Source: Macrostomum lignano (taxonomy: Eukaryota). Taken from it: 64,000 nt of DNA. The stretch spans positions 62,001 through 126,000 of the forward strand of contig NIVC01002935.1 in NCBI GenBank assembly GCA_002269645.1. The letters run 5' to 3'. The translations under genes were made by a program, and so were the position numbers. The notes under the pieces are model-generated. The model did not search any database. It was not told where the DNA came from and saw only the letters and a list, made by a program, of their open reading frames with translations. This document shows, in pieces, positions 10,120 to 64,000 of the stretch (its first letter is position 1; each line of letters opens with the position of its first letter).

Positions 10120-10830
10120 TGGCAATTAGAAATCCCACACTAAAAAATGGCACACCATAAATCCCACACTCAAAAATGGCACATCATAAATCCCACACTC
10201 AAAACTGGCACATCAGAAATCCCACACTCAAAACTGGCACATCAGAAATCCCACACTCAAAAGTGGCACATCAGAAATCCCACACTCAAAAATGGCACAT
10301 CAGAAATCCCACACTCAAAAGTGGCACATCAGAAATCCCACACTCAAAACTGGCACATCAGAAATCCCACACTCAAAACTGGCACATCATAAATCCCACA
10401 CTCAAAAATGGCACATCAGAAATCCCACACTCAAAAGTGGCACATCAGAAATCCCACACTCAAAACTGGCACATCAGAAATCCCACACTCAAAACTGGCA
10501 CATCAGAAATCCCACACTCAAAACTGGCACATCATAAATCCCACACTCAAAAATGGCACATCATAAATCCCACACTCAAAAATGGCACATCAGAAATCCC
10601 ACACTCAAAATTGGCACATCAGAAATCCCACACTCAAAACTGGCACATCAGAAATCCCACACTCAAAAATGGCACATCATAAATCCCACACTCAAAAATG
10701 GCACATCAGAAATCCCACACTCAAAATTGGCACATCAGAAATCCCACACTCAAAACTGGCACATCAGAAATCCCACACTCAAAAGTGGCACATCAGAAAT
10801 CCCACACCCAAAACTGGCACATCAGAAATC
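10120..10830. repeat. Minisatellite, 29 bp unit TGGCACATCAGAAATCCCACACTCAAAAN
   Basis: About 24 units. Confidence 0.95.
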
Positions 10831-11229
10831 CTATCAGCAAGACCTTGAAATCCCACATTACAAATCCCATGCCAGCTAAAAACTGCATTCGAATTCCGAC
10901 ATACGGAATGACCCAGACAAGAGTGCCGAAGCATAAGTGCAAATAAGGTGACAAATTGCAGCAAGGCGCCCGCAGCTGGTAAATAGCAAACAATTTTTAC
11001 AATTCGAAAGCCGGAGCTAAAGCTCTTAAACTACATGGGGCACTTTGGTGGGCCTCGATGCTGACATTGAAACGCTTTTAAGTCTGATGGCTATATGATT
11101 CAGAGACTTATAACTGCTAATTTAAGCCTGCATCTGAATCTTGAGGCTATGGAAATGGGGTTCAAAATACTGGCAGAGTGAGCAGCTGCCTGAGTGCCAG
11201 ATTCCTTTCTGCCACTACGCCGTAGTTTC

Positions 11230-14682: not shown

Positions 14683-14819
14683 CTAAAGTGAAAATGGAGT
14701 GTAAGATGCGTTTATGTTACTTAGAAAGTGGATAGTATAATAGGAATATCGGATCACTTTGTACATAAATGACTGACAAGAATAAAATTAACTGATAAGT
14801 GCGGTTCTTAAACCATTCG

Positions 14820-17010
14820 GAGGGCGATTCTAAACAGTCACTGATGGCGATTCTAAACAGTCACTGATGGCGATTCTAAACAGTCACTCATGGCGATTCT
14901 AAACAGTCACTCATGGCGATTCTAAACAGTCACTCATGGCGATTCTAAAGAGTCACTCATGGCGATTCTAAAGTCACTAATGGCGATTCTAAAGAGTCAC
15001 TGATGGCGATTCTAAAGAGTCACTGATGGCGATTCTAAAGACTCACTCATTGCGATTCTAAAGAGTCACTGAGGGCGATTCTAAAGTCACTGAGAGCAAT
15101 TCTAAAGTCACTCATGGCGATTCTGAAGTCACTGATGGCGATTCTAAAGTCACTGATGGCGATTCTAAAGAGTCACTGATGGCGATTCTAAAGACTCACT
15201 CATGGCGATTCTAAAGAGTCACTGAGGGCGATTCTAAAGTCACTGAGAGCAATTCTAAAGTCACTCATGGCGATTCTAAAGTCACTGATGGCGATTCTAA
15301 AGAGTCACTCATGGCGATTCTAAAGTCACTCATGGCGATTCTAAAGTCACTGATGGCGATTCTAAAGTCACTGATGGCGATTCTAAAGAGTCACTCATGG
15401 CGATTCTAAAGTCACTCATGGCGATTCTAAAGTCACTGATGGCGATTCTAAAGAGTCACTGATGGCGATTCTAAAGAGTCACTCATGGCGATTCTAAAGT
15501 CACTCATGGCGATTCTAAAGTCACTGATGGCGATTCTAAAGAGTCACTGATGGCGATTCTAAAGACTCACTCATGGCGATTCTAAAGAGTCACTGAGGGC
15601 GATTCTAAAGTCACTGAGAGCAATTCTAAAGTCACTCATGGCGATTCTAAAGTCACTGATGGCGATTCTAAAGAGTCACTCATGGCGATTCTAAAGTCAC
15701 TCATGGCGATTCTAAAGTCACTGATGGCGATTCTAAAGTCACTGATGGCGATTCTAAAGAGTCACTCATGGCGATTCTAAAGTCACTGAGGGCGATTCTA
15801 AACAGTCACTGATGGCGATTCTAAAGAGTCACTCATGGCGATTCTAAAGTCACTGAGGCGATTCTAAACAGTCACTGATGGCGATTCTAAAGTCACTCAT
15901 GGCGATTCTAAAGTCACTCATGGCGATTCTAAAGTCACTGATGGCGATTCTAAAGAGTCACTGATGGCGATTCTAAAGTCACTCATGGCGATTCTAAAGT
16001 CACTGATGGCGATTCTAAAGAGTCACTGATGGCGATTCTAAAGAGTCACTCATGGCGATTCTAAAGTCACTCATGGCGATTCTAAAGTCACTGATGGCGA
16101 TTCTAAAGAGTCACTGATGGCGATTCTAAAGACTCACTCATGGCGATTCTAAAGTCACTGATGGCGATTCTAAAGAGTCACTCATGGCGATTCTAAAGTC
16201 ACTGATGGCGATTCTAAAGTCACTGATGGCGATTCTAAAGAGTCACTCATGGCGATTCTAAAGTCACTGAGGGCGATTCTAAACAGTCACTGATGGCGAT
16301 TCTAAAGAGTCACTCATGGCGATTCTAAAGTCACTGAGGGCGATTCTAAACAGTCACTGATGGCGATTCTAAAGTCACTCATGGCGATTCTAAAGAGTCA
16401 CTGATGGCGATTCTAAAGACTCACTCATGGCGATTCTAAAGAGTCACTGAGGGCGATTCTAAAGTCACTGATGGCGATTCTAAAGAGTCACTCATGGCGA
16501 TTCTAAAGTCACTGATGGCGATTCTAAAGTCACTGATGGCGATTCTAAAGAGTCACTCATGGCGATTCTAAAGTCACTGAGGGCGATTCTAAACAGTCAC
16601 TGATGGCGATTCTAAAGAGTCACTCATGGCGATTCTAAAGTCACTGAGGGCGATTCTAAACAGTCACTGATGGCGATTCTAAAGAGTCACTGATGGCGAT
16701 TCTAAACAGTCACTGATGGCGATTCTAAAGTCACTGAGGGCGATTCTAAACAGTCACTGATGGCGATTCTAAAGTCACTCATGGCGATTCTAAAGTCACT
16801 GATGGCGATTCTAAAGTCACTGATGGCGATTCTAAAGAGTCACTGAGGGCGATTCTAAAGAGTCACTGAGGGCGATTCTAAAGTCACTGATGGCGATTCT
16901 AAAGTCATTGATGGCGATTCTAAAGTCACTGATGGCGATTCTAAAGTCATTGATTCTAAAGGCGATTCTAAAGTCACTGATGGCGATTCTAAAGTCACTG
17001 ATGGCGATTC
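14820..17010. repeat. Satellite array, 21/23 bp unit GTCACTGATGGCGATTCTAAA(GA) with higher-order blocks
   Basis: About 100 units; the variant unit GTCACTGAGAGCAATTCTAAA recurs near 15080, 15240 and 15610. Confidence 0.95.
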
Positions 17011-17071
17011 TGGCTCTAAAATGTCTTCAAGAGCACGAGCGGCTTGATATAAAAAACAAAGACCCGATTAC

Positions 17072-44476: not shown

Positions 44477-47400
44477 TCAGTAGTAAGTCAGTCTGTCGGG
44501 TGTTTTGCGTAGACGAGTACTCTGTCGAAAAACCCGTGGATTGGCTGTTGCATGAGAATTTGGCAAATCGGGTACGATTGGTACTGAAGCACCGGAGGAA
44601 GGAACAGGAGACTCATCAGACTCCGGGGTAGTTTGAACCGGTGGTCCCTCATCCGCCGTGGCCGTCCTCGCATTGATGTCAGATTGATGCACCATTCTGT
44701 TTCGGCTATCAGTAGATGTATTTGAACCGAACTTGGAAGTGATCTTCTCCCCAGCCTTGCTAGATTTAGTCTCGATGCGGATGTAGACTGGTTTGGAAGA
44801 GTCTTCCGCTGGCTGATGCAGTTCTGTGCACGTAGCTGATAGACGGGTACGTGGAATTTTTATAAAACTTGACTGGCAGGAATCGCACCGATTGAAGAAG
44901 GTGTGGTGTTTTGTCTTAAGCAGAAAGAAGCAACTGAGTGTTCCACATCGACTTCACCAGATGAACACTTGAGAGCCATCTTAAAAACTTGAATAATGCG
45001 CTCAACGAGACCGTTGGACTGGTGGTGCCCAGGTGGCGTGAGGATTTGTTGAATTTTGTTTGATTTCAGAAATGATTGAAACTCCTCAGATCGAAAGTTG
45101 GTCCCGTTGTCGGTCACCAGAAACTTGGGCAACCCAACGTATTTGAAAGTCTTTCGACACACACTGATAACCGAAGAAGACGTGATGGATCCAAGTGTCT
45201 GAATGTCGATCCAGCGCGAAAAAGCGTCAACCAGCACCAGGAACTTGTAGTCCTTGTAGAAAGCGATGTCCAGGTGAACGCGCTCGAAAAACTCTCCAGC
45301 ATCAGACCAGCTAGCCAGATTTGCATTGGGCTTTTTCCTGGCGTTTAGCTGGCAAATCGGGCACCTCTGGACAAAACTGTTGATGCTCAGGTCGATTGAA
45401 GGCCACCAGAAATATTGGCGCGCAACTCGGATCATCCTCACGATTCCTGGATGTCCTTCATGAAGCAGGTTCAGGATTTCGCGCCTCAGTTGAGATGGTG
45501 GTACAATCCGAATGCCTCTGAAGACAATTCCGTTCTGTATTGTGTACTCGGATCGATCCTTGCTGTATGGAAGCATGTGTTTGGGAGGGTATTCTGGCCA
45601 GCCTTGTGTTATGAACTTTTTCAGCAGAACTATTTCAGAATCTTTTGAATGGGAAATACGTTTGAGAAGTTCTTCGGAATTTCTGAATTCTTCGAGGTTG
45701 TTTATCTCCAGTAGATTCACTGAATTTACGATAGGACATTTTCCAGTACTTGGGATTCTCGACAAGGTATCAGCTGCAAACATTGTCTCCCCCTTTGAAT
45801 AGATGACTTGGTAGTTGTAGGCGCTCAAAGTCAATGCCCAGCGCTGCAATCTGGCTGATACGCGCTCTGAGATCTTGCCAGGATTGAAAATAAACATTAG
45901 TGGGCGATGATCGGAAATTATCTTAAAGTGTCGACCTGCTAGGAACTGGTGATAATATTTAACACCTTCGACAATGGCAAGTGCTTCGCGTTCGATATTC
46001 GAGTAATTCGACTCAGCGGATGTTAGTATTCGGCTTGCGAGCCAGACGACTTGCTGCTGATTTTCATCGTGGGAAAGCACATAACCAATTCCGTCTTTAG
46101 AGGCATCGCACGTCAAAAACAGAGGTTGGGTGATGTCATAAGATACGATTTTGCCTTGAGGTATACTGGATTTTAACTTCTGATAAGCATCTGTGTGAAG
46201 GTCGGTCCAATTCCATGGTACATGCTTTTTTAGAAGATGGTAAAGTGGTTTTGCGATGAGTGAGAAATTCGGGCAGAACAATCCGTAGTGACGCAAGGTA
46301 GACACCGCACTCCTTAGTTGATCTTTGTCTCTTGGTTCTGCCAACTCATTTAGTGCCTTGACCCTTGCAGGATCTGGTTGCAGTTGACCATTAGTGAGTA
46401 CGAAGCCCAAGAACTTGACGCGATCCTTGAACTCCTGAGACTTGTGGACATTAATTTTAAACCCATGTTGAGCAAGTCTGCCCTTTACCAGTGAAAGAAC
46501 TCTGTGATGCTCACTAGCGCTTGGAGTCCCGATTACGATGTCATTTTGGTAAGAAGCTACGTATGGTATACCTCTCAGCAGTTTATCCATCACCTCTTGA
46601 AATATTAACGGAGCGGCGGATATTCCGAACTGCATCTTTCGGAATGCAAAATGGCCCACATGAGTGGAAATACAAGTCAATCGTTGGCTGTCCTCCGATA
46701 ATTCAATCTGCAAGTACGCGTCTTCTAAATCGATCACAGAATAGTGCTTTGCATTTGGAATAGCTGCTAGAATCTCCTCAAGCTTAGGAAGTTTGTACTG
46801 ATCAGGATCGATGAGCCTGTTCAGCGTCACCGAGTAATCTCCACAGATTCGGATGGGTCTGGCCGACCCTTCGGGCTTGAGAACGGGTACTATTGGACAC
46901 GAAACGGTAGGGTTTTCCACAGGGTAGATTATACCAGCAGAAAGCAGTCTGCTCAATTCGGCCTCCACCATAACTTTCATGGAAAATGGCAGAGAACGAG
47001 CACGGTAACACATTCCTTCGAATGAGGCGTTGTTTTTAAGTCGAAAGCTAGCGGTAAACTCATCAGAATTGTTGCAGGTAACTGGACTGCACTTCAGATC
47101 GATCTCCGGGATGAGAGAAAATGCTTTGATGAAGTTCATTCCCAGAATGCACTGTGTGCCGGGCTGTCCGACTAGGATATCGCCAACGGCGCTGTTACCG
47201 CTGCTGTCCGTGACGGTCGCATTTCTCAGTACGCCTAACGCGGTTGTACTCAGGCCACCGTAAACCTTCAAAGCTAATGTGGAATCTTTCTGAATTTCGA
47301 AACCGGTTTTGATGGCTAGGTCCTTTGGTAAAGCTGTGATTTGGCTGCCCGTGTCGATACACATTCTTGCTCTAAGATAGCCGATCTGAAAGTCCTTGTG

Positions 47401-48282
47401 CCACAAAAGACTGCTGCTAGCTGCAATTCCGATGGATAGCGTTTGAGCAAAATCGTCAGCCTCTGTGCCTTTTGTCAGCTCAGTGCAATTTATCTTTTTG
47501 TCACCAGAACGACAAACTGGCGCGATGTGACCCTGCTTTCCGCACTTGTTGCAGGAGGAATTTCTGAATTTGCAGGTTGACCTCAAGTGCCCAGGTTTGC
47601 CGCATGAAAAACAAACTCCTTTCGGACGTTCCATTGCGATTGGTCGAAGCTTCTGGGCAAGACCAGGTTTCGGCGCGAATTTGTTGAGGCCGTCACTGGT
47701 CCTTTGGCTTGAGTTTTTCTTCTTGTGCGGAATTTTTACACTGGCGATTGTATTGTGAGCCTTGGTAGCTACATGAACCGACTCTGACAGAAGCGCATCA
47801 CGCAAGGCATCTTCAAGAGAGAGCTCGTCCTTTGTCAGCAGTTTTTGACGTAGGGACTGGTTGGAGAGTCCGAAGATGAACTGAGATAAAATGAGATCAT
47901 TGGCCAGGTCACCAAACTCACACTTAATAGCCTGATTTTTTAAACGCTCGACGTAAGTCGCTATAGGTTCTCCGGCCTTCTGAGTCATGGCGTGTAAAAC
48001 ATGGCGCTCGAAATGCAGTAGGCGCCGTGGTTTTAAGTGATCCAGGATGGCCTTCTTGATCTGCTCGAAGGTGCACGCACGATTAGTGACTTCTTTTGGT
48101 TGCATTAGTGTTTCCGCTAAGGTGAATGCTGAAGTGCCGCAGGTAGCTAGAAATACCGCCTTCGCATGATCATCGGTCCGTCCGGTAGCAGTGAGGAAGA
48201 ATTCGAACCGTTTGAAGTACTGCTCCACCTCAGGGTACTGCATTGGCATGTCGCCAAGCTTAAACTCGAGAGACGCGGCCAT
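44477..48282 (-). CDS. Gag-Pol polyprotein (two CCHC knuckles, protease, RT, RNase H, integrase)
   Basis: CFSCGKPGHLRSTC and CNKCGKQGHIAPVC; IDTGS protease; RT with YQND; LTCDASKDGIG RNase H; HHCC and D,D(35)E-type integrase. Stated ORF stops at 44860, but a +1 T in the run at 44864-44867 reads through IPRTRL...RQSTRLRKTPDRLTYY* to 44477. Confidence 0.9.
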
Positions 48283-48970: not shown

Positions 48971-50106
48971 ATGGAGGACAGTGAAGATTCGTACCTAAAA
49001 GAGGAGCCTGGTTACGAAGACGAAAGTGAAAGCGACTTTGAAGAGCAGGCTCCAGCGCAACAGCAACAGCCAGTGAGCAACCATGACAGGCAGCGACAAT
49101 TCTCTCCGCTTACCAGAAGGGCGAAGATTTTATCCTACTGGCCTCTCAAATTTGCATCAAGAGAACGACCGCATATTCCATTGTGAGGAGTGGACGAGTG
49201 GAGAAGCTTTCGTGCGGCGGAGCCAAGAACGTGAAGTGGGATGGTGAGATGCAAGAATATTTGTGCGCAATCGTGGAGCAGAATCCATTGCTGACTCTGA
49301 AAGAGATGAACACCATGCTCGGACAAGCTTTTCCTGAGAAGCAACATGTCTCAGAAAAGACACTCAGGAGCATAAAACTCGACGGTGCACTGTTCACAAC
49401 GAAGCTGGCACGAGATCTTCCAGCTGAGCGCAACTCGCCAAGGGTTGTAGCCGCTCGTGAGCAATTTGCTCAATTGATTTGCAATTGATCAGATCAGATC
49501 TTTATTGACGAGTTTGGCTTCAACACATGGATTCGGCGATCCTATGGACGATCTCTTCGTGGACAGCGCGTGTACCGACAGGTTTCTGGACAGAAGGGAC
49601 AGCGTATCACCGTCTGCCTGGCAGTAAGCCCGGCTGCTGGAATCGTGCACTTCCAGTCATACGACAGCGGCATGACAAAGGAGAGATTCGGCGAGTTTCT
49701 CACAATCACAATCACCAACTTCCACAGCGTGTTTCCGGACAGCAGCATCAGTGTTGTCATAGACAACGTCAGCAGCCACAATGACGCCGAAAGCTACGAG
49801 GTCGAAGACGCTGTGGAAGTGAGACGACTGCCACCCTACAGTCCATTTCTCACCCCAGTTGAGAACGCGATATCATGCTGGAAGGCGGCTCTGAAGCGTC
49901 GACTGTCGGCGATCCAAGATTCCTTCATCAGGCCGACCGAGCAGCAGCTTGCTGGTCGCAGCCAGGCGGCGTACCGCCGAGACATTCTACTCTGTGAGGT
50001 GGACGGCACCGCCAACTGCATCACTCCAGAGAAAGTGGCACGGTGGCTCAGCCATTGCTTCAGGTATCTGCCACGGTGCTTGACGTCTCAGCCAATTGAT
50101 GGCTAA
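48971..50106 (+). pseudogene. IS630-like DDE_3 transposase, DD32E spacing, one frameshift and one stop
   Basis: HTH ILSAYQKGEDFILLASQICIKRTTAYSIVR; FIDEFGFN (D 49507); VVIDNVSSH (D 49762); LPPYSPFLTPVE (E 49861). Frameshift near 49097; TGA at 49486-49488. Confidence 0.88.
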
Positions 50107-51047: not shown

Positions 51048-54000
51048 CTGTAAGATTTAGGCAGATAAGCAAAACAAACAATTAATTAAGTTGCTCCTAG
51101 GGTAAAAATGCAAAAATACAATATAAAATATACTAAAGATAAAAGACGTAACGCTATTTTGCTGTTGTCCAAATTGTCGTTGTTAATAGCGTTTACTTTA
51201 GAGCTACATGTATACTCAGCAACCTCGAAAAGTCGCAAACATAGAAGATTCCGTCTGTGGTCGCCACTTTTGAGAGTGCAGGTAAAGTCTCTCAATCTTA
51301 GCGAGTGACGCAACTTAGCTGAGGAATGGAGGGTTCAACGGAAGTCAGAGTTTAAGGCAATGAAGTGGGGGGAGCGGTGTGCGAGGCTTGGACGGATTAA
51401 AGCTACCCCGATCAGCTTTCTCGTATCTTTTATTTCAGAATAGTCCAAGAGAAATTGCTCACTGGCGCATAGAGTGGCCACTTTTCAATGTTGCAGAGTA
51501 TAGATACCGAATTTCAGCAACTTTAATACAAGTAATAATTGTGATTAAGCAGATTTTCCATCATAAACTCATTTCTGTCGTGCATGTATATTATTTCTAT
51601 TATAAAACCTAGCTATAGCTTATGAGATCCGCTTTGTAAAAGCGCCTCCTACTTATATAAACCTTACTAGGCAAGGAGGACTGAGCAGTAAGGAGTGTGA
51701 GGGAAGAGATGAAGAGTATTCAGGGTGTCCACCGGGTCTCAAGTTTTGCTTCATACTAAACATGCATGCATCGTAACTGAACTGCTTTCGCCAACCATTG
51801 TGGACATTTACTTTCTACACTTGAGGAGTTGCTGTCAAGGATGGGGTTTCTTCCTTATCCATCATACATTTTATTTTCTAGATAGTTTACCGGTATTTGA
51901 TTTGCAAAAAAGTATGCATAAACAAGCAAGAAAATATTGCTGGTCAAGATTAGTTTACATTCAGAGTCAAAGTATGTCCCAATTTTTTGTTAAATCAGAC
52001 ACTCTTGCAGTATAATTGCACCCCGTTCTCCAGGTTTGCTGATTAAGTCACCCCAATGCGTCTCGTTCCTGTTTTTTTATGCTTACTTGAATCACCCCTG
52101 CATGCGTGCGAGATATGCCTTAGCTGGTTGGTTTGAGATCTGTTTTTGTGTTGTTGAACCCTCCCTTAATTGTCACCTTGCTTGTTGTGCGATGATTGGC
52201 TTACTTTTCTCTTATTTTGCGCAGTGATTGGCTGGTGGGGGTTGGGCTCTAAGCCTGCTTTTCCTATGGTTGCTGTGGTTTACTTATTTAAGCACGGTGT
52301 CGCTTGCCCATTCTCTCGCTCGCGTGAGCTTAATTTTTTTCAACTAGCTAACTATATCTATAAGAAATTTCTAACACATCGGTTGAGTCGGCAGGCCGGG
52401 TTTCGAGGACTAGATCCAGCTCATCATTGCCTTCTTTTATTCGACTGTCACAGGAAGTTGAAAGGTCCGTATGGTCCTGATGCTTGTAGTGCTCAAGCGA
52501 TAATCCAATATATATGTACATCAACCTTGCGTACAGTGCATACTGGTGGTTCAGTGACCTAGAAGAAATGCTCATCACTATTACTACATAGAAAAAATTT
52601 ATTAAATTTATCGAAAAAGCTTACCTTTACACTTGGTTGGCTCCAGGAGGTTTAGGTGAATGGCAAACTTGATAAACTGGCCAGGTCGATAGACAGCATT
52701 TAGATTCACATCTGCATCATCAAATATGATATCAAAGACCTGTACTTTCATTTTTAGCTGTCCTCTAGATGCTTAAATGAATGAGTTTTGTAGTTATTTA
52801 TTCGGAGAGCTTATCAACTATTTTTTTAGTTTAAAAGGATAGGAAAAATATACTAAAAAACAATTGAATACAGACACCAATAACATCTATTTTTGAATAA
52901 AATGCTTCAAAATAGTACTTATACTGCTATAGTTTGTAGTATATTGTGTATATACTAGTAGCATTCATTAATCTTGAATATCCTAAATTCATCAAGTTCA
53001 TGTTTTATAGTTTTTATATATATTATATATAGTATTATACTACTTGCTTAGCTCTTAATCATGATTGGCTTTAAATATAAATTAAAATATGTCAAGCATA
53101 TTTAGGGTGCTTAACTCTATCAATAAATTAACAAAAATATTCTAAAAGGCATAATTGCTATTACACAGACATTTTATATTTGACAAAAATTATCTTTAGT
53201 TACCTAGTTTAAACAAATAAAATATAATTGTATTCTTATAACACTAAATGAACTATTTTACTATGATAAAAACAAATTTATCTTGTTAGCTCATATATTT
53301 AGGAGCAAATTCACCTGAATTCATTTATATAGTTCACTTTTATACTGGATAAAAAGTAAAAACATTAAATACTGTCAGAAATTTTACACAATACACTACA
53401 AAGTGTAAGTATACTATAGTCTAGAAATAATAATTACTATCTAATGTATACAACACCATAATATGTATATCTAGGTCTATGCTATGTTATAAGTAAAGTA
53501 AAAGTTATATTATTAAATGAAAAATGGATGATTTAGCCTTTCAAAAAGTGTTCTTATATTTACCATGATTAATATTATTATTAATATATAATATGTAAAA
53601 ACTACAATTACTAAGTACTAGTTAAGCAGCTAAAACTGTCCAGTGTCCTAGTGCATACCAAAATAAATATAACTTGTCATCATAAATACAAAAAAAATAT
53701 AATTATATGCTTTTTGAGTGATTTTAGCATAAGTTTTGCTCTAAATCTAAAATTCGCTGGGGAAACTACCACTAACCCTTCTCAATCAAAGAAACGCTTC
53801 GCCGCCACAGCCCATGGATCAAACAGCCTTGTTCAACAGCTGACTCATGCGAATAAGATTTAAAAGGGAATAAACAGTTTTTTTCGAGGGGTGAGAGAGC
53901 TCAACTAAAAATTAAAATCTATTCAAACTATAAATCATAATGATACTTTTTAGCGTTTGTACAAATATAACATATATGAAGTCACCATGCTAAAATTAGC

Positions 54001-54861
54001 CTTAATTTTTGTTTAAATGTAGACATTTCAAAATTTTAGTACGGTTCATGGGATCTACTCTGTATTCTACAAACAGTAGTTAACATATTCTTGATTCTGA
54101 TTCTAGAACAAGAACCACTATGCAAAATATAAATTTGTTTTTGCTACTAGAACTAGAGTATAAGGTACGTACAGGGTACAGCGTATGGACGTTAAATTTT
54201 GGATATTAATTTCAAGCATTCCGTTGTGACGAATTTAATCTGGCAGTCCTTGGCAGAACAAGACCGAACAAGACCGAAGAAAAATGAAAGTATAGCGCAG
54301 TCCAATATTCAATTGAATTGATATATTTTGCTTGCTTAGTTGGCCAAGTTTTTTTTATTTGTTTTTGAGTAGCGACGAAAAACGAACAGTTAATATAAAA
54401 CGATAGATGATACAGCGAATTGTAATTGGCTGAGTGTTACGATGGGCGCTGGGCAAATTATTGATTTGTTAAAAATTCATCACTTGCTGACATATAAAAG
54501 CCGATTCAATGAATGTACTCGTACACAGAATTCATACAAAATATGATACACTTACGTAGTAGTCTACTGATAGTAAAAATGATAGTAAAACAATGAAGTT
54601 TTCCACAAGTCCCCCGTCACACCGTCATCACCCCGACGTCGAGAGAGTTAATAGCTGAGAACTTCTAATAGTTGAGGTTTGTTCTTTGTTGAAGTTTGTT
54701 CAGCCGACATAAAATTCGCCTCATGGTGTCCATTAGTCGCATCTGGGGCCACCTGTTGGACGTCCGGATCCGGGAAGCTCCCGCCTGGGTGAAAGACAAG
54801 TGACCAATAAAGTCAGATCGATCGAGCTGATCGAGGCATGCGGTCGCGATACGCTAGCGCT

Positions 54862-55055
54862 CAGTGGCGCAGCCAGGAAATTATTTCGGGAGGGCCCATT
54901 CAGCACCCGGAGGAGGGGTTATAGGGGGCGGGGATTTTTCTCTGGAACTAATTCAGGAAGAGGAGTAATTTTTCTCCGGAATTTTTTTGGGGGAGGGGGG
55001 TAAATAATTGCGAGGGGCAGGCTCCCCGGCTCCTCCCTCCCTGGCTGCGCTACTG
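54862..55055. mobile_element. hAT-type MITE (194 bp)
   Basis: TIR CAGTGGCGCAGCCAGG / CCTGGCTGCGCTACTG (1 mismatch); 8 bp TSD CTAGCGCT / CTAGCACT. Confidence 0.85.
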
Positions 55056-55299
55056 CTAGCACTAAAGGGAGTTTAGCCAGTGTTCTTAAATTTTGTGTGT
55101 ATTGTCACATATGTCACTTCGATCGTTTCAGTGCGGCAAAGAAATCCGTTATCTTGAGTGTTTGACGGCCGCGGAAAAATGGCTCAGTTATTCGACCTAT
55201 TGTTAAAAGCCATGCTGAGATACAAAAAAATTTGCAATTATTTTTATTTGCCATTTGCCATCGAGCACTTCGAATACGTCGGCAATTTTAGAAATGTTG

Positions 55300-58190
55300 A
55301 CTTAGCTTGACTTAGCTGCAACCGGGCTCCGTGCGTCCGGAAACAGCGAGGAGGCGTTGCCGCGCATTTCGCTAACCCCTGGAGACCACGGGCAGCTATA
55401 GTGCTGCGGTGTCATGCAGGGAGTTCCGGTGGTGCCGGTGTCCACAGCTCGGTCCCCCTCCGGAGAGTCCAGGAGGTGGATTGTCGCTCGCCTGTAGCCC
55501 TTAGGTAGCGCAAGAGCTGGCAGAGATTCTCGGGCCTGAAAACGTCGGAGAGGTCCGGGTTTGGGCCGAGGTAGGTGAGCCTGTCCTGAGTAAAGGCGGG
55601 GCATTCACAGATAAAGTGCTCCGCATTCTCGACACTGGAGAGGGAGAATGGGCATTCCTCACTGCGATTTTTTCCCTGGAGGTGACGATGCCTGGCAAAA
55701 CAGCCATGACCCGAGAGGGCCATGGTCACCGTGAGGTCCCTGCGGTTGAGTCCAAGCAGGGCCCTGCGCAGGGCGGAGGAAGGACAGGGGACAGCCGCGC
55801 GGGATTGCCGGCAGTCGGGGGCGTTAGCCCACCTCTCCCTGTGCTTAGAAGCCAGGGAGTTGGCCAGGCAATCGGCCAAAACTCGTTGCCGGGGTGGCCC
55901 GAATGCCCAGGGATCCACCTTAGGGACACCTTGTTAGAGGCGCCTAAGCGGTTGAGCTGCCCGATGCAGTCGAGGACTGTACGCGAGCAGGTGGTGGTGC
56001 GCTCAAGGGCGTGAATCGCCGCTTGACTGTCCGAGTGGAGGGTAATCTCCTTCCCCCAGATGCGTTGATTGTACAGCTCCATGGTGCAGGAGCTAATGGC
56101 GAGAATTTCGTTCTGGAAGACGGTGAAGCAGGTGCCGGTGTGTTGGGAGAAGGTCGCCACAGTTCTCCCTCCAGACACGATGCCGTAGCCGTAGCCAGAG
56201 GCGGAGTTGATTTGGGACCCGTCAGTGAAGCAGTGGATTTCATGGGGTTTCCAGTTGTCTCTTTCTGGAATGGACGTGGTGGAATGCTGGTTTTGAATTT
56301 GAGCGGAGGGCATGCGCAGAGCGTGGACGGGATTCCGTCCGAGAGGGTCAGCAGGCCTCTCGCTGCTTCCAGGTCTCGCAGGCTGAGGTCGCCATGCGGC
56401 CGGAGGTTCCGCTTTCTGAAGGTGAACTGCTTCTGGATATCCGCGTCAAGCAGACGGCGGGTGGTTTTCATTGCCTCCCCTCTAACAAAGAGGTCGAGGG
56501 GGGGAATGTCCAAGAAGGAGTTCATGCCAGCGAAGGGCGTAGAGGGAGCCGCGCTCATGATAGCTCGACAAGTGCGGCCTTGCACCCTATTTAGAACCTC
56601 AAAAACCCCTTTCACCTCTAGGGCACTGTTCCAAATGAAGCCGGAGAAGGAGATGGCCGGTCTAACAATGGCAGTGTAAATCCACCAGAGGCGGCGGGGG
56701 TGAGGCCCCAGGTAGCGCCGAAAGCTCTGCGGATCAGCGCGAGAGTCGCGAGAGCTTTGCGGGCTTTGGTTTGGACGTGCGGGGTTCAGCTCAACCTGAC
56801 CTGTGGTCGAGGGTGACGCCCAGACATCTGGTTTGTTTCTCCATGGCAACGGGTTTGTCATTGAGGGAGAGCGGTTCAATCCTCCAGTTTCGGCGGCTGG
56901 TGAACATGATTGCCACGGTTTTAGACTCAGAGAACCTGAGACTGCAGCTATGTGCGCGGTGGATGAAGGCTTGAAGGAGGTCCCTGAGGACCGCGGGTGA
57001 TGGTCCAGCCACAGTGGCAGTAACATCGTCCGCATAGCCGACCTTCATAACAGGGTCCGGATGCGGGCTGCAAAGCAGCTCGTCCATGACTAAATTCCAG
57101 AGAATCAGGCTGAGGACTCCACCTTGCGGTCCGCCTTTCTGGACTTCCACGGAGCGTGAGTCTCCCAAGGAGGTGCGAGGTGGCAGTACGATGGGAGACC
57201 ATGTACATGATCCAGCGGGTAAGGTGCTCATGCGTGCCCTGGGATTCCAGGGCCCGCTTAAAGGCTTCAAAGAGCACATTATTGAACACACCATCAAAGT
57301 CGAGGAAAAGCGACAGCGCGTATCCACTGCCAAGCACGGCGCGCTCCAGCTTGTCGACAATGGCGTGAAGCGCACTTTCGATGGAACGTCCAGGACGAAA
57401 GGCGTGCTGATTAGGGGAGAGCGGGGAGTTCCTCAGCTCTACGAGGAGGCGCCAGAGCACCAGCTGTTTCATCAGTTTGAAAAAGAAAGACGTCTCAGAC
57501 TGATAGGGCGGTAAGCTTTGGCGGAGTGATAGTCTCCCTTCCCTGGCTTGGGTATGAAGACTACCGTGGCCTCTTGCCAGGCTTTTGGCACGTACCCGAG
57601 GGTAATGCTGGCCTTGAAGAGGTTGCAGAGGAGGCCATTTTTAACTGCCTCATGAAGGAAGGCAGGATAAATCTTGTCAGGTCCCGTTTACTTGAAAGGA
57701 GAGAATGATTTTGCGGAGCGAGCCGTCCTCTCTCTAGTAATGATGGTCGAAGCCAGGATCTGTCCGCCCGGAGAGTGGTCCAGTGGGCCTAGCTGCGGTG
57801 CGGCACGTGGGAAAGAGCTGGTGAGAGCATGATGTCCAGCCGAAGGCTTTCAGCAGCTCGAGGAGCTGTTGCCTAGACTGGCTGTCGGCGGGCTGGATAT
57901 GAAGGGCTTGGTCCTCGAATTTCGTCTTTTGGACTTGAATAGCGGTACCGCTCAAGGCCATCTTGACCAGGTGGGAGTCCAACCTGCGCCAGATAAGGTT
58001 GAGCTGTTCGGCCGTAAGAGGCGTCTCCCGGCCTTGGATGATCAGGGCCGGCTGCCTCTTGGCCATAGCCGCATAAGTGCGCTTTGGTGGTTTGGCCAGC
58101 ACTCCCCCCCCCTGCTTTGGATCCCTCCATGGCCGTGAGAGCTTCCACACGAGCAGAGGTCCGCACCAGCAGCTTTGGCAGCACCAATTG
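55300..58190 (-). mobile_element. Degraded non-LTR retrotransposon with RNase H (LOA/R1-like, I group), 5'-truncated and lacking the endonuclease
   Basis: RT motifs across frameshifts (AYRPISLTS, NQHAFRPGRS, LFLDF, GGPQGGVLS, GYADD, LGVTLD); RNase H ([24 protein letters not shown]); C-terminal GHG...EHFICECP. 11 bp TSD TAGAAATGTTG at 55289-55299 and 58191-58201. 3' tail is a short tandem of TAAGTCAAGC. Confidence 0.88.
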
Positions 58191-60481
58191 TAGAAATGTT
58201 GCAAAGGGTGCATGTACGGACGTACTAGCTAGTACACGTACTGTAAGACAGCCCACTGGGCGCTTCTATAGTTCTGGCGCCTCTGATGCTTTGGTGCGTG
58301 TCAGTGAAATTGCGCCTTAAAAGGCGTGGTCCTCCGACCCAATAAAAAGTATTTGGTTACAGCTAATTTACAGCCAGCAACCAGGCGTTCAGTATACGCG
58401 GGCTACACGTACATGTATATATATATACATGTACTTAAATAAAAATGTTGAAACTATAAAAACAAATTGCTTAAATGCGGGCCACCGAACCCAGGCATAC
58501 AGCGTGTATACCGAAACAGCTTCGGAAGTTATGTTTTTTCTTCGAGTTATACAATTAAGTGTATGCATGTAAATGTGTTGAGTCTCAATGAACTCAGATT
58601 TATTAGATTTATGTAGCGAGAATAGGCACGTGAAGAGCAGGTGAACTTATAAATTAGTGTACATACATGTACATGTAGCTCACAGTTTGAAAAGCCCGAT
58701 ATTACGTTATGAATCTGCGCGTCAGACAGCTCGAATGCTATATAGACAATCAAATACTTGGAGTCAATGTACAACCGCGCATTGAAAAGCCATATTCACA
58801 ATGTCTATATGTACATATTCTACATATTCATGTAAATGGGATTTTGTTTTTTGACTCATGTCTCATCTATAAACGTTATAAAAATTATACCGATGTATAC
58901 AGTATATTAATGAATGCAAATTTTAGAGGCAATATCATGTACATGGATGTAGACTGTCCAAAAAAGGTCATAAAAATTCAAGATATATAGTGTCACACCA
59001 TAACCTGTAAAAGGTTCAGTGTTAAACTGCTTAACTATGTATACTACGCAAAACGAGGTGAGGTTATTTGAAAAAAATTCAAGAGAAGACGATTAAATTT
59101 CTTGGGGTAGAAAACAATGATGACAGCTGCTAAGCCGCATGACTTGAGAAGAAAACGAGCTTTGTAGCTATGGCTTCCAAAATGTGTATTGAATTTTGGG
59201 GGTACCGGTAATTAGTTCAGTTGAATGCCACAATAAATAAATGAGCTGAGAGAATAAGTCCTAGAATTCCAATGTGATAATGATTAGGGCTTATACTCGT
59301 ACAATCGTATTTAGCGAATTTGAGCGAGCGCATTACTGATGCAGGCCTATAATGCTCGGCGTATTAATCAGTTTAAGCAATTGCAAAATCAAATATAATG
59401 ACGCTCTGAACATTCAAAGCTACGCGCATTTTAATTCTACATATAATACGCAGCATACTACTCGTATTGATATTCAATTGTACGAGCGTATTTACCATGC
59501 GCATACCTTTTTAAAAACAGCTCATCCGGATATCGCGCAAGCAAATTAGGACTACTTCAAATTCAACCAACCAAAAAATGAAGTACTAGAAGAATGAAAT
59601 GTTCATCATCATTCACAAAACACTTGATAAGACAGCGTAAGAAACATTTTCACAGACAGGTAAAAATTGAAATTACGCTTTAATGCGTAATCACAATAAA
59701 AAAAAACAAAAAAAATTGCATACACGAAATCAAACTTTATTGCAATAACAATAATTTTAGCGCATTCAATATTTGCATGGACAGTGGATGCACTACAAAC
59801 GATAACGCATACGAGATTGCTGTATGTCTAAAAATCCATTCATAATCTATTTTCTTGTTCGCATAGATATTATTTAGAGGTCTGAGGTTAACATTAAATT
59901 TAAGGGTGTTTCAAAAAATTAACAAACTGCATTTTGGAACAAAAGCACACGCGAACAATTACATTAATTGACTGAAGTCTCTTGTTAGGAACAGAAAATT
60001 CGCTCTAACACACGTCGAACTCTGCACTTTAACTTATGCACTGTTTTAATTTTAAATTTTGTTCCTGTTGTGTAACCGTGCGTTTCATCCTCACGTGGTC
60101 ACAAGTTTGGTGGTGTGGATACAAAATCTTATTAAATTAGAACGATTAAGTGTAAGTGTAATACGAATTTAAGCGGTATATTAGGTAATTTTGAACAGAG
60201 GGCCGTAAGCATCTTAATGGCCGGTTTGACACACTTTTTACCATAGACAACTAGCAGTGAGGCTCAAAATACATGTGTTTTTGCTATCTTGCATTAAATT
60301 GCTTTCTCGTAGTCTTTACTAGCTTGCAAAATGCTATATTTGAAACAATTCGACTTCCTTAAAGGTAACGAGGGGCAAAAGCTTCATGTTTGATATGGTG
60401 GATTGATTTGAAAGCGAAAATATTTTACTACTCTTGAATGCAATAACCACTAAATTCACCAAATCCAATTATTAAATGAAT

Positions 60482-61866
60482 TCATTCGTGTTGTTCAGCT
60501 TGCAACTCAGAGCATCGCTTCTCAACCAGCTCTAACTTCGCTTTCTCCAGAGGGTGAATCGGCTTGCGAACGACTTGACACATCCTCCTGTGTGCTGCTC
60601 TCAGTGCCTTCGGATCCCGGCAGAACTCGCAAAAGGCGTACAGCTCCTCAAAGTCAGGATCAAGCTGAAGTTCAGAGAACCAGTCTGAAACTGAAAATAG
60701 GTTTGGCAGGGCAACAGCGCTCAGGCATTTCAGCAGAGCATTGAAGTTCATGTAGAAAAAAAGCTTGAAGTCGGGCATCTCGGCAGGAAAGAGTCGTCGC
60801 AGTCTGTCGGGCAGGAAGGTGAACACTGGGAGAGTCTTGGCTGCGAAAACAAAGCGCCACGCGGCATCAGTCTCTTGCAAATGCTGCCAGATCAATAACT
60901 TGGCCTCTTGGGCATCTGAACAGACAGTGAATGGCACGAAGCGAGATGCTCGATGCTCCAGTGAATCTTTTAGAACTTCCGTTACAGAGTCGTGTTTCCC
61001 AAACTTCCACAAAGCCAAAGCTGTCAGGCAAACCCTAGCACTGTATGCGTGATCCGGAATTCTAGCGATGTCTCTCAGATACTGCTCAAGCGGCAAGTCC
61101 TGTTCCACCAGCTCCATTAGCGTAACATAAATGTAGTCGTACAGCCTGTGGTACTTTGCAATGTCGTCCGGTTTGACTGTCTCTATACCAATCTCCGACA
61201 GCAAGAAAGGATGGAAGTAGAAATTATCGGAATCCAGTGGCTTTAGCACGGATCTTACATAACTTTGCAGATGCAGCTGTAAGTTCTGCCTCATCTCGAT
61301 AGCTGCTCGCCGAATCTGCTGCTTACGGTGTCCCTCTGAGTCCGCACCTTTAATAAACAACGGCCCGTCCTTCAAAAAGAAGTGTGGCATCAGTACATCC
61401 GGGCGTTCAATGGAATCGAGAAGTTCCACCAGTAAATCCATGGATTTTTCTGTCAAGTGAAACAAGTTTTCGCTAGACCAGATGGACTCGTCCTCGCGAC
61501 CAATCATAAAGAAGGTTAACGTCTTGGCGTGATAGGACTTTAGACCTGCAACTCCCAGCTTTTTTGCCATCACTTTCTTAATAAGGTACTTAAGCAGGAC
61601 AAATAGCCGTCCCTGTGTGTCGTTAAACTGGCGAATAAATCGTTTCTCGAGAAAACTGTAACTAGCCCTGTACTCATTTTTGTGTCCTGGCCGGGTAGCG
61701 ACAACCAGGTGAATTTCGGTTTCTTTGCTTAACTCGTCGCGAATATTTGGCGGCAGTCTGCCTAGGAAATCAGCTGGCTCGGGAAAGCAGCAACATGGAA
61801 ATGCGGTGCAAAAGTCTGCCGCGGGTCGCGCACCGGTAGCTCGGTCCGAATGGGCTGGCTGATTGC
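60482..61866 (-). CDS. cGAS/Mab-21-like nucleotidyltransferase (cGLR), large 3' exon of 460 codons
   Basis: The frame stays open 97 codons upstream of the listed ORF to an acceptor tttatccag|GC: ADFCTAFPC...EIHLVV...EYRASYSFLEKRFI...RLFVLLKYLIK...LKSYHAKTLTFF...W..ENL...LMPHFF. These match Mab-21 family motifs DLVPA, HLV, WR.SFS..E, LLK, SYH.KT and LPH+F. Confidence 0.85.
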
Positions 61867-62199
61867 CTGGATAAATTTTAAATGATAGTTATAAATATAT
61901 CATTCTCTTTATGCTTTCCTAGACATGTAAGTGTTGCTGTCATAGATAGTGCCTGAACTAAAATCACAATAAAGTGAAGGTATAGAGCTGTAAGAACAAG
62001 CGAAAACGAGAAATTGGCTTAAGGCGTAGACCAACTCTTGGCTGCCCAGGGCGCCAAGGCATTCACTTATATATTATCATTGTACAGCGAGCAAATGTAC
62101 ATAAGAGCTAGTGAACGTGCGCACACGCAATCAACTAAGCAAACCATCTTACAGAGCGATAGAGTCCTACAGTGACAAAGCGGTTTCTCGTCAGCCTAG

Positions 62200-64000
62200 C
62201 ATGGACTCCAGAAAGCGTTGAGTATTGTGAGCGACAGTCACCAGAATGGCCCAGAAAGGCCAAGACCAGCTCGAGCCATAGGCTGCTGAGGAAGATATCG
62301 AAAGCAAACTGAAAGCACTGTGCCTCAAGAAGCAACAGCTGCTGGCAGTGGAAGAAGAACTGTCCGTTGAGCTCGTCGAGAATGCACTCCAAGAGTAAGT
62401 GGAAAAGACGATGGAGTTCGAGTTGCTGGCTGGAGAGATGATTTCAAGTCTCGCCGAGCGACTACAGATTCTTCAGGTCGAGTGAGAAAGCCGCATGCTT
62501 TAGCGTGCTGCTTTAGCGACTCCGCTGGCCATCAGGCTGCCTATACTGCCGCCACCAGCATTCGGTGGAGATCGGACTCAATGGACTTCATTCTGGGACC
62601 GCTTCAGTTCCAGCAACCACGACAACTCGAGCCTCAGCGTTGTTGACAAGTTCAGCTACCTGCAATCGTGCCTTTCAGGAGAAGTCAAGAATTTGATCGC
62701 TGGCCTTAACATCACGGCTGAGAACTACAAGATTGCGATAACCTGCAACGACGGTTTGGATCCTGGAGTGGAGCCGTGCGCGATCATCTGGCGAAGTTTT
62801 CCCCGATGATCTACTTAGGTGCTTCGGTCCACCACCTGAGAAACTTCTACGATCAAGCCAGTGGCAATGTCTGCAGCCTGGAGAATCTCGGGGTGATGTT
62901 GCTTCATACGAGACCATCTTGCTGTTCAACTTGCTGACGAACTTGCCGGAAGTGAGATGCTTAGAACTGCCAGGATAGTTTCCATACGCTCTTCCCATGG
63001 TAGCAGTCAATAACAGGTGACAAATTGAAGCGGCCTAGTGTTGATTAAAAAATTCCTCAATGCCTTGACCTTGACCTAGAAATCCTATTTGAGGAGGAAG
63101 CTGCTCTCGGAGCGAGAGTTCAACACAGGAAAACAAAGGAATCCGCGGTATCTGCTGTGCAGCCTAAGGCTACGAAGGTCGCCAAAGTCAGAAACATGTG
63201 TCCTTACTGTGATGCTGAACATACTCCAAAAAGTTGGGATCTACTGGTGGATGTGTTCACTAAGTTTCGATTCTTAAAAGAACAAAGACACTGCTTCAGT
63301 TGCCTCAAACCAAAAGCCATGCCCCCACGACTTGTTATCAAAAGAAGTAGTGTGGCTTCTACAAGTTGAAGCATCATCCCAGTCTGCTCTACCCGAGTGG
63401 AACAGCTACAGCAACGGCCGGCAGACAAGATTCCTTGATGCATCATCGATACGGTGGGTTCAGGAAAGAAGAACCCGAACAGTCGGCCGCGCAGGGTGTC
63501 AAAATTCACGAAGTGAAGACTATGGCGATGGTTACCAAGGCCAGACAGTGATTTGTCCTACTGCTGGAGCTATGCTGATTTCACAAGGTGGCAGCAGTGA
63601 AATAGGGGTTAGAAGTCTCTTCGACTCTGTGAGTAACCGTTCGTTTATTATGTCGGGCGTAGCTGAGCGGAATTTAGTGTGATCGGCTAAGACACAATGA
63701 AAGTAATGAAATTCGGAGGCACACAGCCTAAGGTCCTATAAACGGAGGTCGAGTTCCAACTTCATAAGCTAGTCAACCGTTTCACATTACGCATTACACA
63801 GTACCATACATCTGCTCTTTTTTTTATTAGAGGCAGGGGGTTGTGTGCACCCTGGCGCACTTTAAGCGACATTGTCACACAACCGGCGAGAGGCATTACT
63901 GCCCATTCCGCCGACTCCCCTGAGCAGGCATACAAGCGCGCGGATACGTACGCAGGCACACACTCACACAGGAGTGTACAGCGGCCCTAACTTTATTTAT
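62200..64000 (+). mobile_element. Decayed BEL/Pao LTR retrotransposon (gag and protease region), continues past the window end
   Basis: LPPPAFGGDRTQWTSFWDRF...DKFSYLQSCLSGEVKNLIAGLNITAENYKIA (DUF1759 gag, ~62540-62745); CFSCLKP knuckle; RSLFDSVSNRSFI (DUF1758-type protease, ~63610). Many stops and frameshifts. Confidence 0.85.

What the first reader, a model, noticed from the sequence alone, without database searches (positions are those of the whole stretch)
60482..61866. Intact cGAS-like receptor (cGLR) exon with a long unassigned C-terminal extension
Seen: a 460-codon open exon in a neighbourhood where almost every other non-FAM13 reading frame is broken. It carries the Mab-21/cGAS C-terminal half, including a likely third catalytic Asp (ADFCTAF, aligning with VDLVPA), followed by roughly 250 further, mostly helical residues that I cannot assign. 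Known: animal cGLRs sense nucleic acids and make cyclic dinucleotides, and are characterised mainly in mammals, insects, cnidarians and molluscs. Inferred: this may be a divergent, lineage-specific innate-immune sensor with an extra C-terminal module, in an animal group (possibly flatworms) where the pathway is poorly described. The exon with the hG[S/G] and [D/E]h[D/E] motifs must lie to the right, beyond the BEL/Pao insertion.
Basis: partly seen in the sequence, partly recalled or inferred. Interest (0 to 1): 0.75.

Follow-up and report, generated by a model that had tools for sequence, protein, structure and literature searches.

The report
Flatworm cGAS-like receptor gene, last exon
This is the intact last coding exon of a cGAS-like receptor gene from the flatworm Macrostomum lignano; it belongs to a large family specific to that species that has already been catalogued, and what remains undescribed is a conserved tail domain of about 250 residues that matches nothing known.

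Summary
Window 60482-61866 (- strand) is a 460-codon open exon with an AG acceptor at 61867-61868 and a TGA stop at 60482-60484. It differs at one residue from residues 205-664 of Macrostomum lignano PAA75531.1 (BOX15_Mlig030220g1).

- **Domain:** it carries a Mab-21_C domain scoring above Pfam's cut-off, and the third catalytic Asp (D221).
- **Missing motifs:** the GS and DVD motifs sit in an upstream exon about 1.6 kb beyond the right end of the window.
- **Fold:** an AlphaFold2 model (pLDDT 92) matches cGAS, cGLR1, MAB21L1 and MB21D2 structures over its first ~330 residues.
- **Tail:** the last ~254 residues fold confidently but match nothing in Pfam, PDB or BFVD. They also do not match the tails of mollusc or annelid cGLRs. 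They are conserved in M. lignano paralogues only.
- **Family:** there are at least 64 clusters at 50% identity, mostly ankyrin repeats followed by the cGLR core and this tail. The catalytic residues are kept in 25-29 of 29 paralogues.

Li et al. 2023 already catalogued M. lignano ankyrin-cGLRs and cloned five of them; none is among their 15 active enzymes. My verdict is a new member of a known kind. Enzymatic activity, ligand and downstream receptor are unproven.

The parts
60485..61866 (-). Terminal coding exon (exon 4) of the ankyrin-cGLR gene. It encodes residues 204(part)-664 of PAA75531.1, starts in phase 1 and has 460 complete codons.
   Evidence: Open frame. tblastn of P0001 gives residues 204-664 at 99.8% identity. 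There is one nucleotide difference from the public locus L001, changing Leu to Met.
60482..60484 (-). TGA stop codon
61867..61868 (-). Splice acceptor AG (ttatccAG|GC)
   Evidence: The acceptor pairs with the GT donor at L001 11037.
61814..61816 (-). Codon of the third catalytic Asp (D221, in AADFCTAF)
   Evidence: It lies 54 residues after D162-V-D164-W and is conserved in 25 of 29 paralogues.
61247..61866 (-). C-terminal half of the cGLR catalytic core: the last strands of the nucleotidyltransferase lobe plus the helix bundle. Corresponds to model residues ~116-321.
   Evidence: AF2 model with pLDDT 92.4. The Foldseek top 50 hits are all cGAS, cGLR1, MAB21L1 or MB21D2, at probability 1.0.
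61349..61603 (-). Mab-21_C (PF20266) HhH/H2TH-like domain, exon residues 88-172
   Evidence: 27.3 bits against a cut-off of 24.1. It is hit in 22 of 24 family members. The family profile aligns this stretch with cGAS at E = 3e-7.
60485..61246 (-). Family-specific C-terminal domain of ~254 residues (P0001 411-664). It is mostly helical, with a few short strands.
   Evidence: AF2 on this region alone gives pLDDT 91.4 and pTM 0.90. No Pfam hit in 24 members, and no PDB profile hit. Foldseek best E is 0.087 against PDB and 0.25 against BFVD. hhalign against mollusc and annelid cGLR tails gives probability 0.4%.
61869..64000 (-). The 3' part of intron 3. The whole intron is 3.7 kb; its remainder and exons 1-3 lie beyond the right end of the window.
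   Evidence: Exon mapping on L001. No upstream exon is found in the window.
62561..62743 (+). Degraded BEL/Pao-type gag fragment (DUF1759) inside the intron, on the opposite strand
   Evidence: PF03564 at 61.6 bits, E = 1e-16. The translation was verified.

Best explanation
The feature is the last and largest coding exon of a Macrostomum lignano gene. The protein has three parts: N-terminal ankyrin repeats, a cGAS-like receptor (cGLR) nucleotidyltransferase core, and a ~254-residue helical C-terminal domain found only in this family.

**Shown**
- The exon is intact.
- It belongs to an RNA-seq-derived gene model.
- The protein keeps the full GS / DxD / D catalytic set with the correct spacing.
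- It is confidently predicted to adopt the cGAS/cGLR fold.
- It is one of at least 64 diverged paralogue clusters in this species that keep those catalytic residues.

**Inferred**
- Like characterised cGLRs, the protein is held inactive until a ligand binds away from the active site. It then condenses two NTPs into a cyclic dinucleotide-type second messenger that switches on a downstream receptor.
- The ankyrin repeats and the C-terminal domain are the ligand- or partner-binding and regulatory parts. In the model the C-terminal domain forms one compact body with the catalytic core (pTM 0.92).
- The large species-specific expansion points to a role in immunity rather than development.
For: - **Exon and junction:** intact 460-codon exon with an exact splice junction.
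- **Identity:** matches PAA75531.1 apart from one residue, and the surrounding 11.4 kb is 99.8% identical to NIVC01000876.1.
- **Expression:** GenBank models of this assembly derive from RNA-seq transcript assemblies (PMC5730564).
- **Domain:** Mab-21_C scores above its cut-off and is hit in 22 of 24 family members.
- **Catalytic residues:** G140-S141, D162/D164 and D221 have spacings of 20 and 54 residues. Among 29 paralogues they are conserved 29, 28, 27 and 25 times.
- **Fold:** AF2 pLDDT 92.4 and pTM 0.92. The Foldseek top 50 hits are all cGAS, Cv-cGLR1, Sp-cGLR1, MAB21L1 or MB21D2, with E from 8e-7 to 5e-5.
- **Family size:** 250 hits, 64 of them with E below 1e-30. All 13 named clusters I looked up among ranks 2-90 are from M. 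lignano, most with N-terminal ankyrin repeats.
- **Link to published work:** the query hits the cluster containing PAA57558.1, which is cGLR #91 of Li et al., at E = 5e-42. Li et al. list M. lignano ankyrin-cGLR fusions in their domain table.
Against: - No enzymatic activity is known for any member. The five M. lignano cGLRs in Li et al.'s screen have an empty Note column, so they are not among the 15 active enzymes.
- Pfam's Mab-21 NTase model PF03281 is hit by none of 24 members. TM-scores to solved cGLRs are moderate, 0.46-0.59 when normalised by target length.
- The residue before GS is Cys (Val in most paralogues), not the Q/T of the published motif.
- In the public locus the upstream ankyrin ORF is out of frame with exon 1. 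This copy may therefore lack most of its ankyrin domain, or may be decaying.
- No STING or other receptor was looked for in this genome. [quoted passage not shown]
Confidence: 0.65

Rival explanations
1. It is a non-catalytic Mab21-fold scaffold or adaptor. The cGLR fold would serve only as a binding platform between the ankyrin and C-terminal domains, as proposed for the developmental MAB21L proteins, and no second messenger would be made.
For: MAB21L1 ranks among the best structural matches. PF03281 is not hit. No M. lignano member is listed as active in Li et al.'s screen. The position before GS departs from the published motif.
Against: All five catalytic residues are present and conserved in 25-29 of 29 paralogues that are only ~30-40% identical overall. 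According to Wu et al. 2014, MAB21L proteins have lost most of these residues. A screen using E. coli-made, truncated proteins and nucleic-acid ligands only cannot show inactivity.
Confidence: 0.17
2. It is a decaying gene copy. The exon would be a still-open remnant in a transposon-rich region, with the gene already disabled upstream.
For: There is a frame break between the ankyrin ORF and exon 1 in L001. A BEL/Pao fragment lies in the 3.7 kb intron. The neighbourhood is full of retroelements.
Against: A 460-codon frame with no stop is not expected in a dead gene. The two sequenced copies differ by one nucleotide in 1385. The gene model derives from transcripts. The frame break lies in a G run and may be an assembly error, and a Met-initiated protein still contains the whole cGLR core.
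Confidence: 0.08
3. It is an active nucleotidyltransferase with different chemistry or a different role. It might make linear 2'-5' oligonucleotides as OAS does, or transfer nucleotides to a protein or RNA substrate, rather than making a cyclic dinucleotide for STING.
For: The product cannot be read from the sequence. STING has not been shown in this species. The added ankyrin and C-terminal domains are atypical: 87% of cGLRs carry no extra domain (PMC9980059).
Against: The best structural and sequence matches are cGAS and cGLRs, with no OAS among the Foldseek top 50. The nearest relatives outside the species are mollusc and annelid proteins with Mab-21 plus Mab-21_C.
Confidence: 0.1

Closest known systems
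Macrostomum lignano ankyrin-cGLR proteins catalogued by Li et al. 2023 (e.g. PAA57558.1, PAA93208.1, PAA68676.1, PAA86972.1, PAA45980.1; screen samples 89-93)
   Same: Same species and same architecture (ankyrin repeats, cGLR core, C-terminal tail). The motifs match: GSxxEGWxN, SDIDW, RPAxD, GLKxYHAKT, MPHFF, FYFHPF. Direct sequence hits have E from 1e-42 to 1e-85.
   Different: Identity to this paralogue is only 30-42%. I could not find PAA75531.1 itself in the stored copies of their tables, which are truncated. Their text does not discuss the C-terminal domain.
Structurally characterised cGLRs: human/mouse cGAS, Sp-cGLR1 (8gjy), Cv-cGLR1 (8gjw), human MB21D2 (7lt1)
   Same: Same predicted bilobed NTase plus helix-bundle fold, the same catalytic residues and spacing, and Mab-21_C homology.
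   Different: Identity is 13-17%. There is no cGAS-type zinc thumb; instead a family-specific Cys/His-rich insert lies between DxD and the third Asp. About 350 residues of ankyrin repeats are added at the N terminus and ~254 at the C terminus. Ligand and product are unknown.
Mollusc/annelid ~700-aa cGLR-TPR proteins (e.g. Sinanodonta woodiana KAL3855470.1)
   Same: They are the nearest relatives outside Macrostomum, with E from 1e-10 to 1e-5 over the third-Asp region plus Mab-21_C. They too carry a ~350-residue helical C-terminal region.
   Different: They hit PF03281 and TPR models, which this protein does not. Their tails show no detectable similarity to this one (hhalign probability 0.4%; extension HMM finds none of them). 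They have no ankyrin repeats.
MAB21L1/MAB21L2 developmental proteins
   Same: Same fold, and among the top Foldseek hits.
   Different: According to Wu et al. 2014 they keep only one of the five catalytic residues, whereas this protein keeps all five. They are single-copy conserved genes, not a species-specific expansion.

Membership tests
cGLR (criteria of Li et al. 2023) | Active-site motif h[QT]GS X8-20 [DE]h[DE]h X50-90 h[DE]h | tested here: met
   The sequence reads M-C-G140-S141, then 20 residues, D162-V-D164-W, then 54 residues, A-D221-F. Conservation in 29 paralogues is 29, 28, 27 and 25. One deviation: Cys (Val in most paralogues) replaces Q/T before GS. GS and DVD lie in exon 3, outside the window; only D221 is in the window.
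cGLR (criteria of Li et al. 2023) | Sequence homology to the C-terminal helix bundle (Mab-21_C, PF20266) | tested here: met
   27.3 bits against a cut-off of 24.1. It is hit in 22 of 24 family members. The family profile matches cGAS at 3e-7 and Sp-cGLR1 at 6e-7.
cGLR (criteria of Li et al. 2023) | Sequence homology to the N-terminal NTase core (Mab-21, PF03281) | tested here: not met
   None of 24 members hit PF03281 at E <= 0.01. There is only indirect support: alignments to mollusc proteins that do carry PF03281 reach back to the third-Asp region.
cGLR (criteria of Li et al. 2023) | Predicted structural homology to known cGLR / CD-NTase enzymes (AlphaFold2) | tested here: met
   Model pLDDT 92.4 and pTM 0.92. 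The Foldseek top 50 are all cGAS, cGLR1, MAB21L1 or MB21D2, at probability 1.0, with 334-390 aligned columns and target-normalised TM 0.46-0.59.
cGLR (functional definition) | Ligand-stimulated synthesis of a nucleotide second messenger | not testable with these tools
   This needs biochemistry. The five paralogues screened by Li et al. are not among their 15 active enzymes.
cGLR-STING pathway | A STING or other cyclic-dinucleotide receptor encoded in the same genome | not tested
   No tool here searches one species' proteome. M. lignano is absent from the stored Table S5 of Li et al.. Older literature reports STING lost in flatworms, based on Schistosoma.
Ankyrin-cGLR fusion class (Li et al. 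Fig. 1C / Table S2) | Ankyrin repeats fused N-terminally to the cGLR core | tested here: met
   In P0001, Ank_2 scores 30.3 bits and Ank_4 30.9 bits at residues 4-63. A 346-aa ankyrin ORF lies directly upstream, and model P0017 joins it to exons 1 and 3. All of this is outside the window, and there is a frame break in L001.
MAB21L developmental proteins | Degenerate active site (most catalytic residues lost); conserved single-copy gene | tested here: not met
   All catalytic residues are present, and there are at least 64 diverged paralogue clusters.
cGLR-TPR fusion class (molluscs) | C-terminal tetratricopeptide repeats recognisable by Pfam | tested here: not met
   No TPR model is hit in 24 members. 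hhalign against 26 such tails gives probability 0.4%. The only structural echoes of TPR/PPR proteins are weak, with E >= 0.087.
OAS (2'-5' oligoadenylate synthetase) | OAS-type NTase and OAS1_C domains | tested here: not met
   No OAS Pfam hit and no OAS among the Foldseek top 50.

The most novel reading that the evidence does not exclude
The conserved ~254-residue C-terminal domain may be a new fold that acts as the ligand-sensing or autoinhibitory module of a Macrostomum-specific receptor class (ankyrin repeats, cGLR core, C-terminal domain). Such receptors would respond to something other than the standard nucleic-acid ligands, which would explain why five paralogues were not scored active in a nucleic-acid screen. 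They would signal in a phylum long described as having lost cGAS-STING, possibly through a receptor other than STING.
Probability: 0.2. Interest if true: 0.7.

Novelty: new member of a known kind. Interest (0 to 1): 0.38.

Why it matters
Flatworms are usually cited as having lost cGAS-STING (Wu et al. 2014). Li et al. 2023 state that most platyhelminths have no cGLR other than Mab21-like proteins. M. lignano is the exception. This locus shows what its expansion looks like:

- dozens of diverged genes with ankyrin repeats, a cGLR core and this tail;
- an intact catalytic set;
- a confidently folded tail domain with no known relative.

M. lignano is a tractable laboratory animal with transgenesis (PMC5730564); RNAi is also established in it, from my own knowledge. 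The family is therefore a practical place to ask what appended domains do to a cGLR and what receives its signal in a flatworm. The gene itself is not a discovery. It is annotated, and its family is in a published catalogue.

Tried and rejected
- **PF03281 (Mab-21 NTase domain):** no hit for the exon, the whole protein or 24 relatives.
- **DUF1347:** 15-16 bits against a cut-off of 26.6, in 1 of 24 members. Rejected as noise.
- **Upstream exons in the window:** tblastn finds none; they lie beyond base 64000.
- **C-terminal domain.** None of these gave an assignment:
  - Pfam on 24 members;
  - PDB profile search;
  - Foldseek against PDB, best E 0.087;
  - Foldseek against BFVD, best E 0.25;
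  - extension HMM against all 152 retrieved proteins, M. lignano-type hits only;
  - hhalign against 26 mollusc/annelid cGLR tails, probability 0.4%;
  - profile search of the 5.8-billion-protein set, a single M. lignano hit (this word-indexed search did not even return the known paralogues, so its silence means little).
- **Intron ORFs:** no Pfam hit singly. Only a six-frame scan found the DUF1759 fragment.
- **PAA75531.1 in Li et al.'s tables:** not found, but files 1, 2 and 4 are truncated as stored, so this is inconclusive.
- **STING in M. lignano:** literature searches found nothing. I did not run a sequence search, because no tool here can restrict a search to one species.

Full report
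**What is in the sequence**

On the - strand the reading frame is open from 61864 to 60485, which is 460 codons, and ends in TGA at 60482-60484. The ORF listing shows only the 363 codons after the first GTG. Immediately upstream is a polypyrimidine-poor but canonical acceptor, ttatccAG|GC, with the AG at 61868-61867. By my own estimate (stop frequency about 3/64), an open frame this long has a chance of about 2e-10 per start position.

**Whose gene it is**

A protein search returned one cluster, Macrostomum lignano PAA75531.1 (BOX15_Mlig030220g1, 664 aa). UniProt names it 'Mab-21-like HhH/H2TH-like domain-containing protein'. Residues 204-664 map onto the window at 99.8% identity.

The public locus (NIVC01000876.1, fetched as L001) is 99.8% identical to window 52557-64000 over 11.4 kb. 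Within the exon it differs by one nucleotide, giving Leu in place of Met. The window is therefore the same locus in another haplotype or assembly.

**Gene structure**

In L001 the annotated exons are 10001-10189, 10519-10596, 10694-11036 and 14765-16149, with a GT donor at 11037 and a phase-1 junction. Exon 3 carries HMCG140S141YAEGW and GS-D162-V-D164-W. None of exons 1-3 is in the window; exon 3 would start about 1.6 kb past base 64000.

The 3.7 kb intron contains a DUF1759 (BEL/Pao gag) fragment on the opposite strand, at window 62561-62743 (61.6 bits).

Directly upstream of exon 1, L001 has a 346-aa ORF of ankyrin repeats. A second public model, P0017 (UniRef A0A1I8GX36, 468 aa), joins this ORF to exons 1 and 3 and skips exon 2. 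In L001 the two are out of frame around a G run near 9945. The annotated protein, which starts at MDYSGD, is therefore probably truncated at the N terminus by an assembly error or a real frameshift.

GenBank models for this assembly come from RNA-seq-based transcript assemblies (PMC5730564). This is indirect evidence that the gene is expressed and spliced as drawn.

**Is it a cGLR?**

- **Sequence.** Mab-21_C (PF20266) scores 27.3 bits against a cut-off of 24.1 and is hit in 22 of 24 family members. A family profile matches cGAS at 3e-7 and Sp-cGLR1 at 6e-7, again over the helix-bundle part. The NTase-domain model PF03281 is hit by none.
- **Motif.** G140-S141, then 20 residues, D162-x-D164, then 54 residues, D221 fits the spacing Li et al. 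require (41 for the criterion). The exception is that Cys, not Q/T, precedes GS. In an alignment of 29 paralogous domains that are only ~30-40% identical, these positions are kept 29, 28, 27 and 25 times.
- **Fold.** An AlphaFold2 model of residues 90-664, built with 24 family sequences, has pLDDT 92.4 and pTM 0.92. All of its top 50 Foldseek hits in the PDB are cGAS, Cv-cGLR1, Sp-cGLR1, MAB21L1 or MB21D2. Probability is 1.0, E runs from 8e-7 to 5e-5, 334-390 columns align, and TM is 0.46-0.59 per target length.

I conclude that the protein has the cGLR fold and a complete catalytic set. The NTase lobe is too diverged for Pfam's model.

**The C-terminal extension**

After the last helix shared with cGAS, about 254 residues remain (P0001 411-664, window 60485-61246).

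- They are conserved across the family, with motifs FYFHPF, RLPDxAxTAR, DSAWKFCF and YVNFxAL.
- Modelled alone, they fold with pLDDT 91.4 and pTM 0.90 into about eleven helices plus a few short strands.
- The whole-protein pTM of 0.92 suggests the tail packs against the core rather than dangling.

Nothing identifies this domain. There is no Pfam hit in 24 members and no PDB profile hit. The best Foldseek E is 0.087 against the PDB, where only weak TPR/PPR-like solenoid echoes appear, and 0.25 against BFVD.

It is also not the 'ordinary' long tail of mollusc cGLRs. An HMM of the extension finds only Macrostomum-type proteins among the 152 retrieved. A profile-profile comparison with 26 mollusc/annelid cGLR tails gives probability 0.4%.

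**The family**

An exhaustive HMMER search gave 250 hits, with 91 below 1e-10 and 64 below 1e-30. Each hit represents one cluster at 50% identity.

- All 13 named clusters I looked up among ranks 2-90 are from M. lignano.
- Most are 900-1400 aa, with many ankyrin repeats in front of the cGLR core and tail.
- One protein, P0002, holds two complete cGLR-plus-tail units.
- No paralogue cluster is more than 42% identical to this protein.
- The next tier, at E from 1e-10 to 1e-5, consists of ~700-aa proteins with Mab-21, Mab-21_C and TPR from a bivalve (Sinanodonta) and an annelid (Lamellibrachia), plus unnamed assemblies.

**What is already known**

Li et al. [quoted passage not shown] Their tables nevertheless list M. 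lignano proteins with Ank_2 domains, and their screen included five M. lignano cGLRs, samples 89-93, whose sequences plainly share this architecture, tail included. One of them, PAA57558.1, sits in a cluster that my query hits at 5e-42. Their 'Note' column, which names the 15 active enzymes, is empty for all five.

Ankyrin-cGLR fusion is one of their named architecture classes. Their main text discusses neither Macrostomum nor this tail. I could not tell whether PAA75531.1 itself is in their Table S1, because the stored copy is truncated.

**How it most likely works**

The shown facts are an intact, transcript-supported gene, the cGLR fold, and a complete and conserved catalytic set.

From the established behaviour of cGAS and other cGLRs I infer the following. 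A ligand binds away from the active site and reshapes it, and two NTPs are then joined into a cyclic dinucleotide-type messenger that a receptor reads. The appended ankyrin repeats and the tail are the likeliest ligand- or partner-binding and regulatory parts. The species-specific expansion, with conserved catalysis and diverging surfaces, fits an immune receptor family.

My probabilities are:

| Claim | Probability |
|---|---|
| Membership of the M. lignano cGLR clade | about 0.95 |
| Catalytic competence | about 0.6 |
| An immune role | about 0.5 |

The rivals are a non-catalytic scaffold, a decaying copy, and different NTase chemistry. They are listed with their evidence in the Rival explanations section.

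**Verdict**

The novelty is modest, because this is a further member of a catalogued family. The part worth attention is the orphan C-terminal domain, together with the open questions of ligand, product and receptor in a phylum usually described as lacking this pathway (PMC4117786).

Noticed in passing
window 44860-48282 (-): An intact 1140-aa gag-pol ORF of a Ty3/gypsy-type LTR retrotransposon. Pfam finds gag, zinc knuckle, aspartyl protease, RVT_1, RNase H, integrase zinc-binding domain and rve, all in one frame.
   Followed up: partly
window 55412-57472 (-): Several overlapping 168-363-aa ORFs whose sequences look like reverse-transcriptase and RNase H pieces of a degraded non-LTR retroelement (judged by eye, with no Pfam run). 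GC content here is 0.57.
   Followed up: no
window 49570-50106 (+): A 178-aa ORF that looks like the C-terminal half of a DDE (Tc1/mariner-type) transposase, judged by eye only.
   Followed up: no
window 5896-7268 and 14820-17011: Two long tandem-repeat arrays, self-matching at about 90% identity at many offsets. The first lies in a block with a very strong GC skew of 0.61.
   Followed up: no
L001 9900-10000 (outside the window, about 2.6 kb beyond its right end): The 346-aa ankyrin-repeat ORF upstream of exon 1 is out of frame with exon 1, around a run of G. One public gene model bridges the break with a mini-intron, and the other starts at the next Met. This could be an assembly error or a real frameshift.
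   Followed up: partly
P0001 residues 176-256 (exon 3 plus window 61709-61792): A family-conserved Cys/His cluster: H176, C181, C183, H197, C229 and H256, each kept in 24-27 of 29 paralogues. It lies in an insert between the DxD motif and the third Asp.
   Followed up: partly
protein P0002 (M. lignano, UniRef A0A1I8GXZ3, 1346 aa): It contains two complete tandem cGLR-plus-tail units (residues 17-602 and 767-1339), a multi-cGLR fusion comparable to OAS2/OAS3.
   Followed up: no
L001 7473-8050 (outside the window): A long microsatellite that reads as (SIYL)n in two frames, about 2 kb upstream of the ankyrin ORF.
   Followed up: no
window 52557 / L001 24088-24472: The window lacks about 380 bp present in the public locus. 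Identity drops from 99.8% to 96.9% to the left of that point, which suggests a haplotype or duplicate-copy boundary.
   Followed up: no
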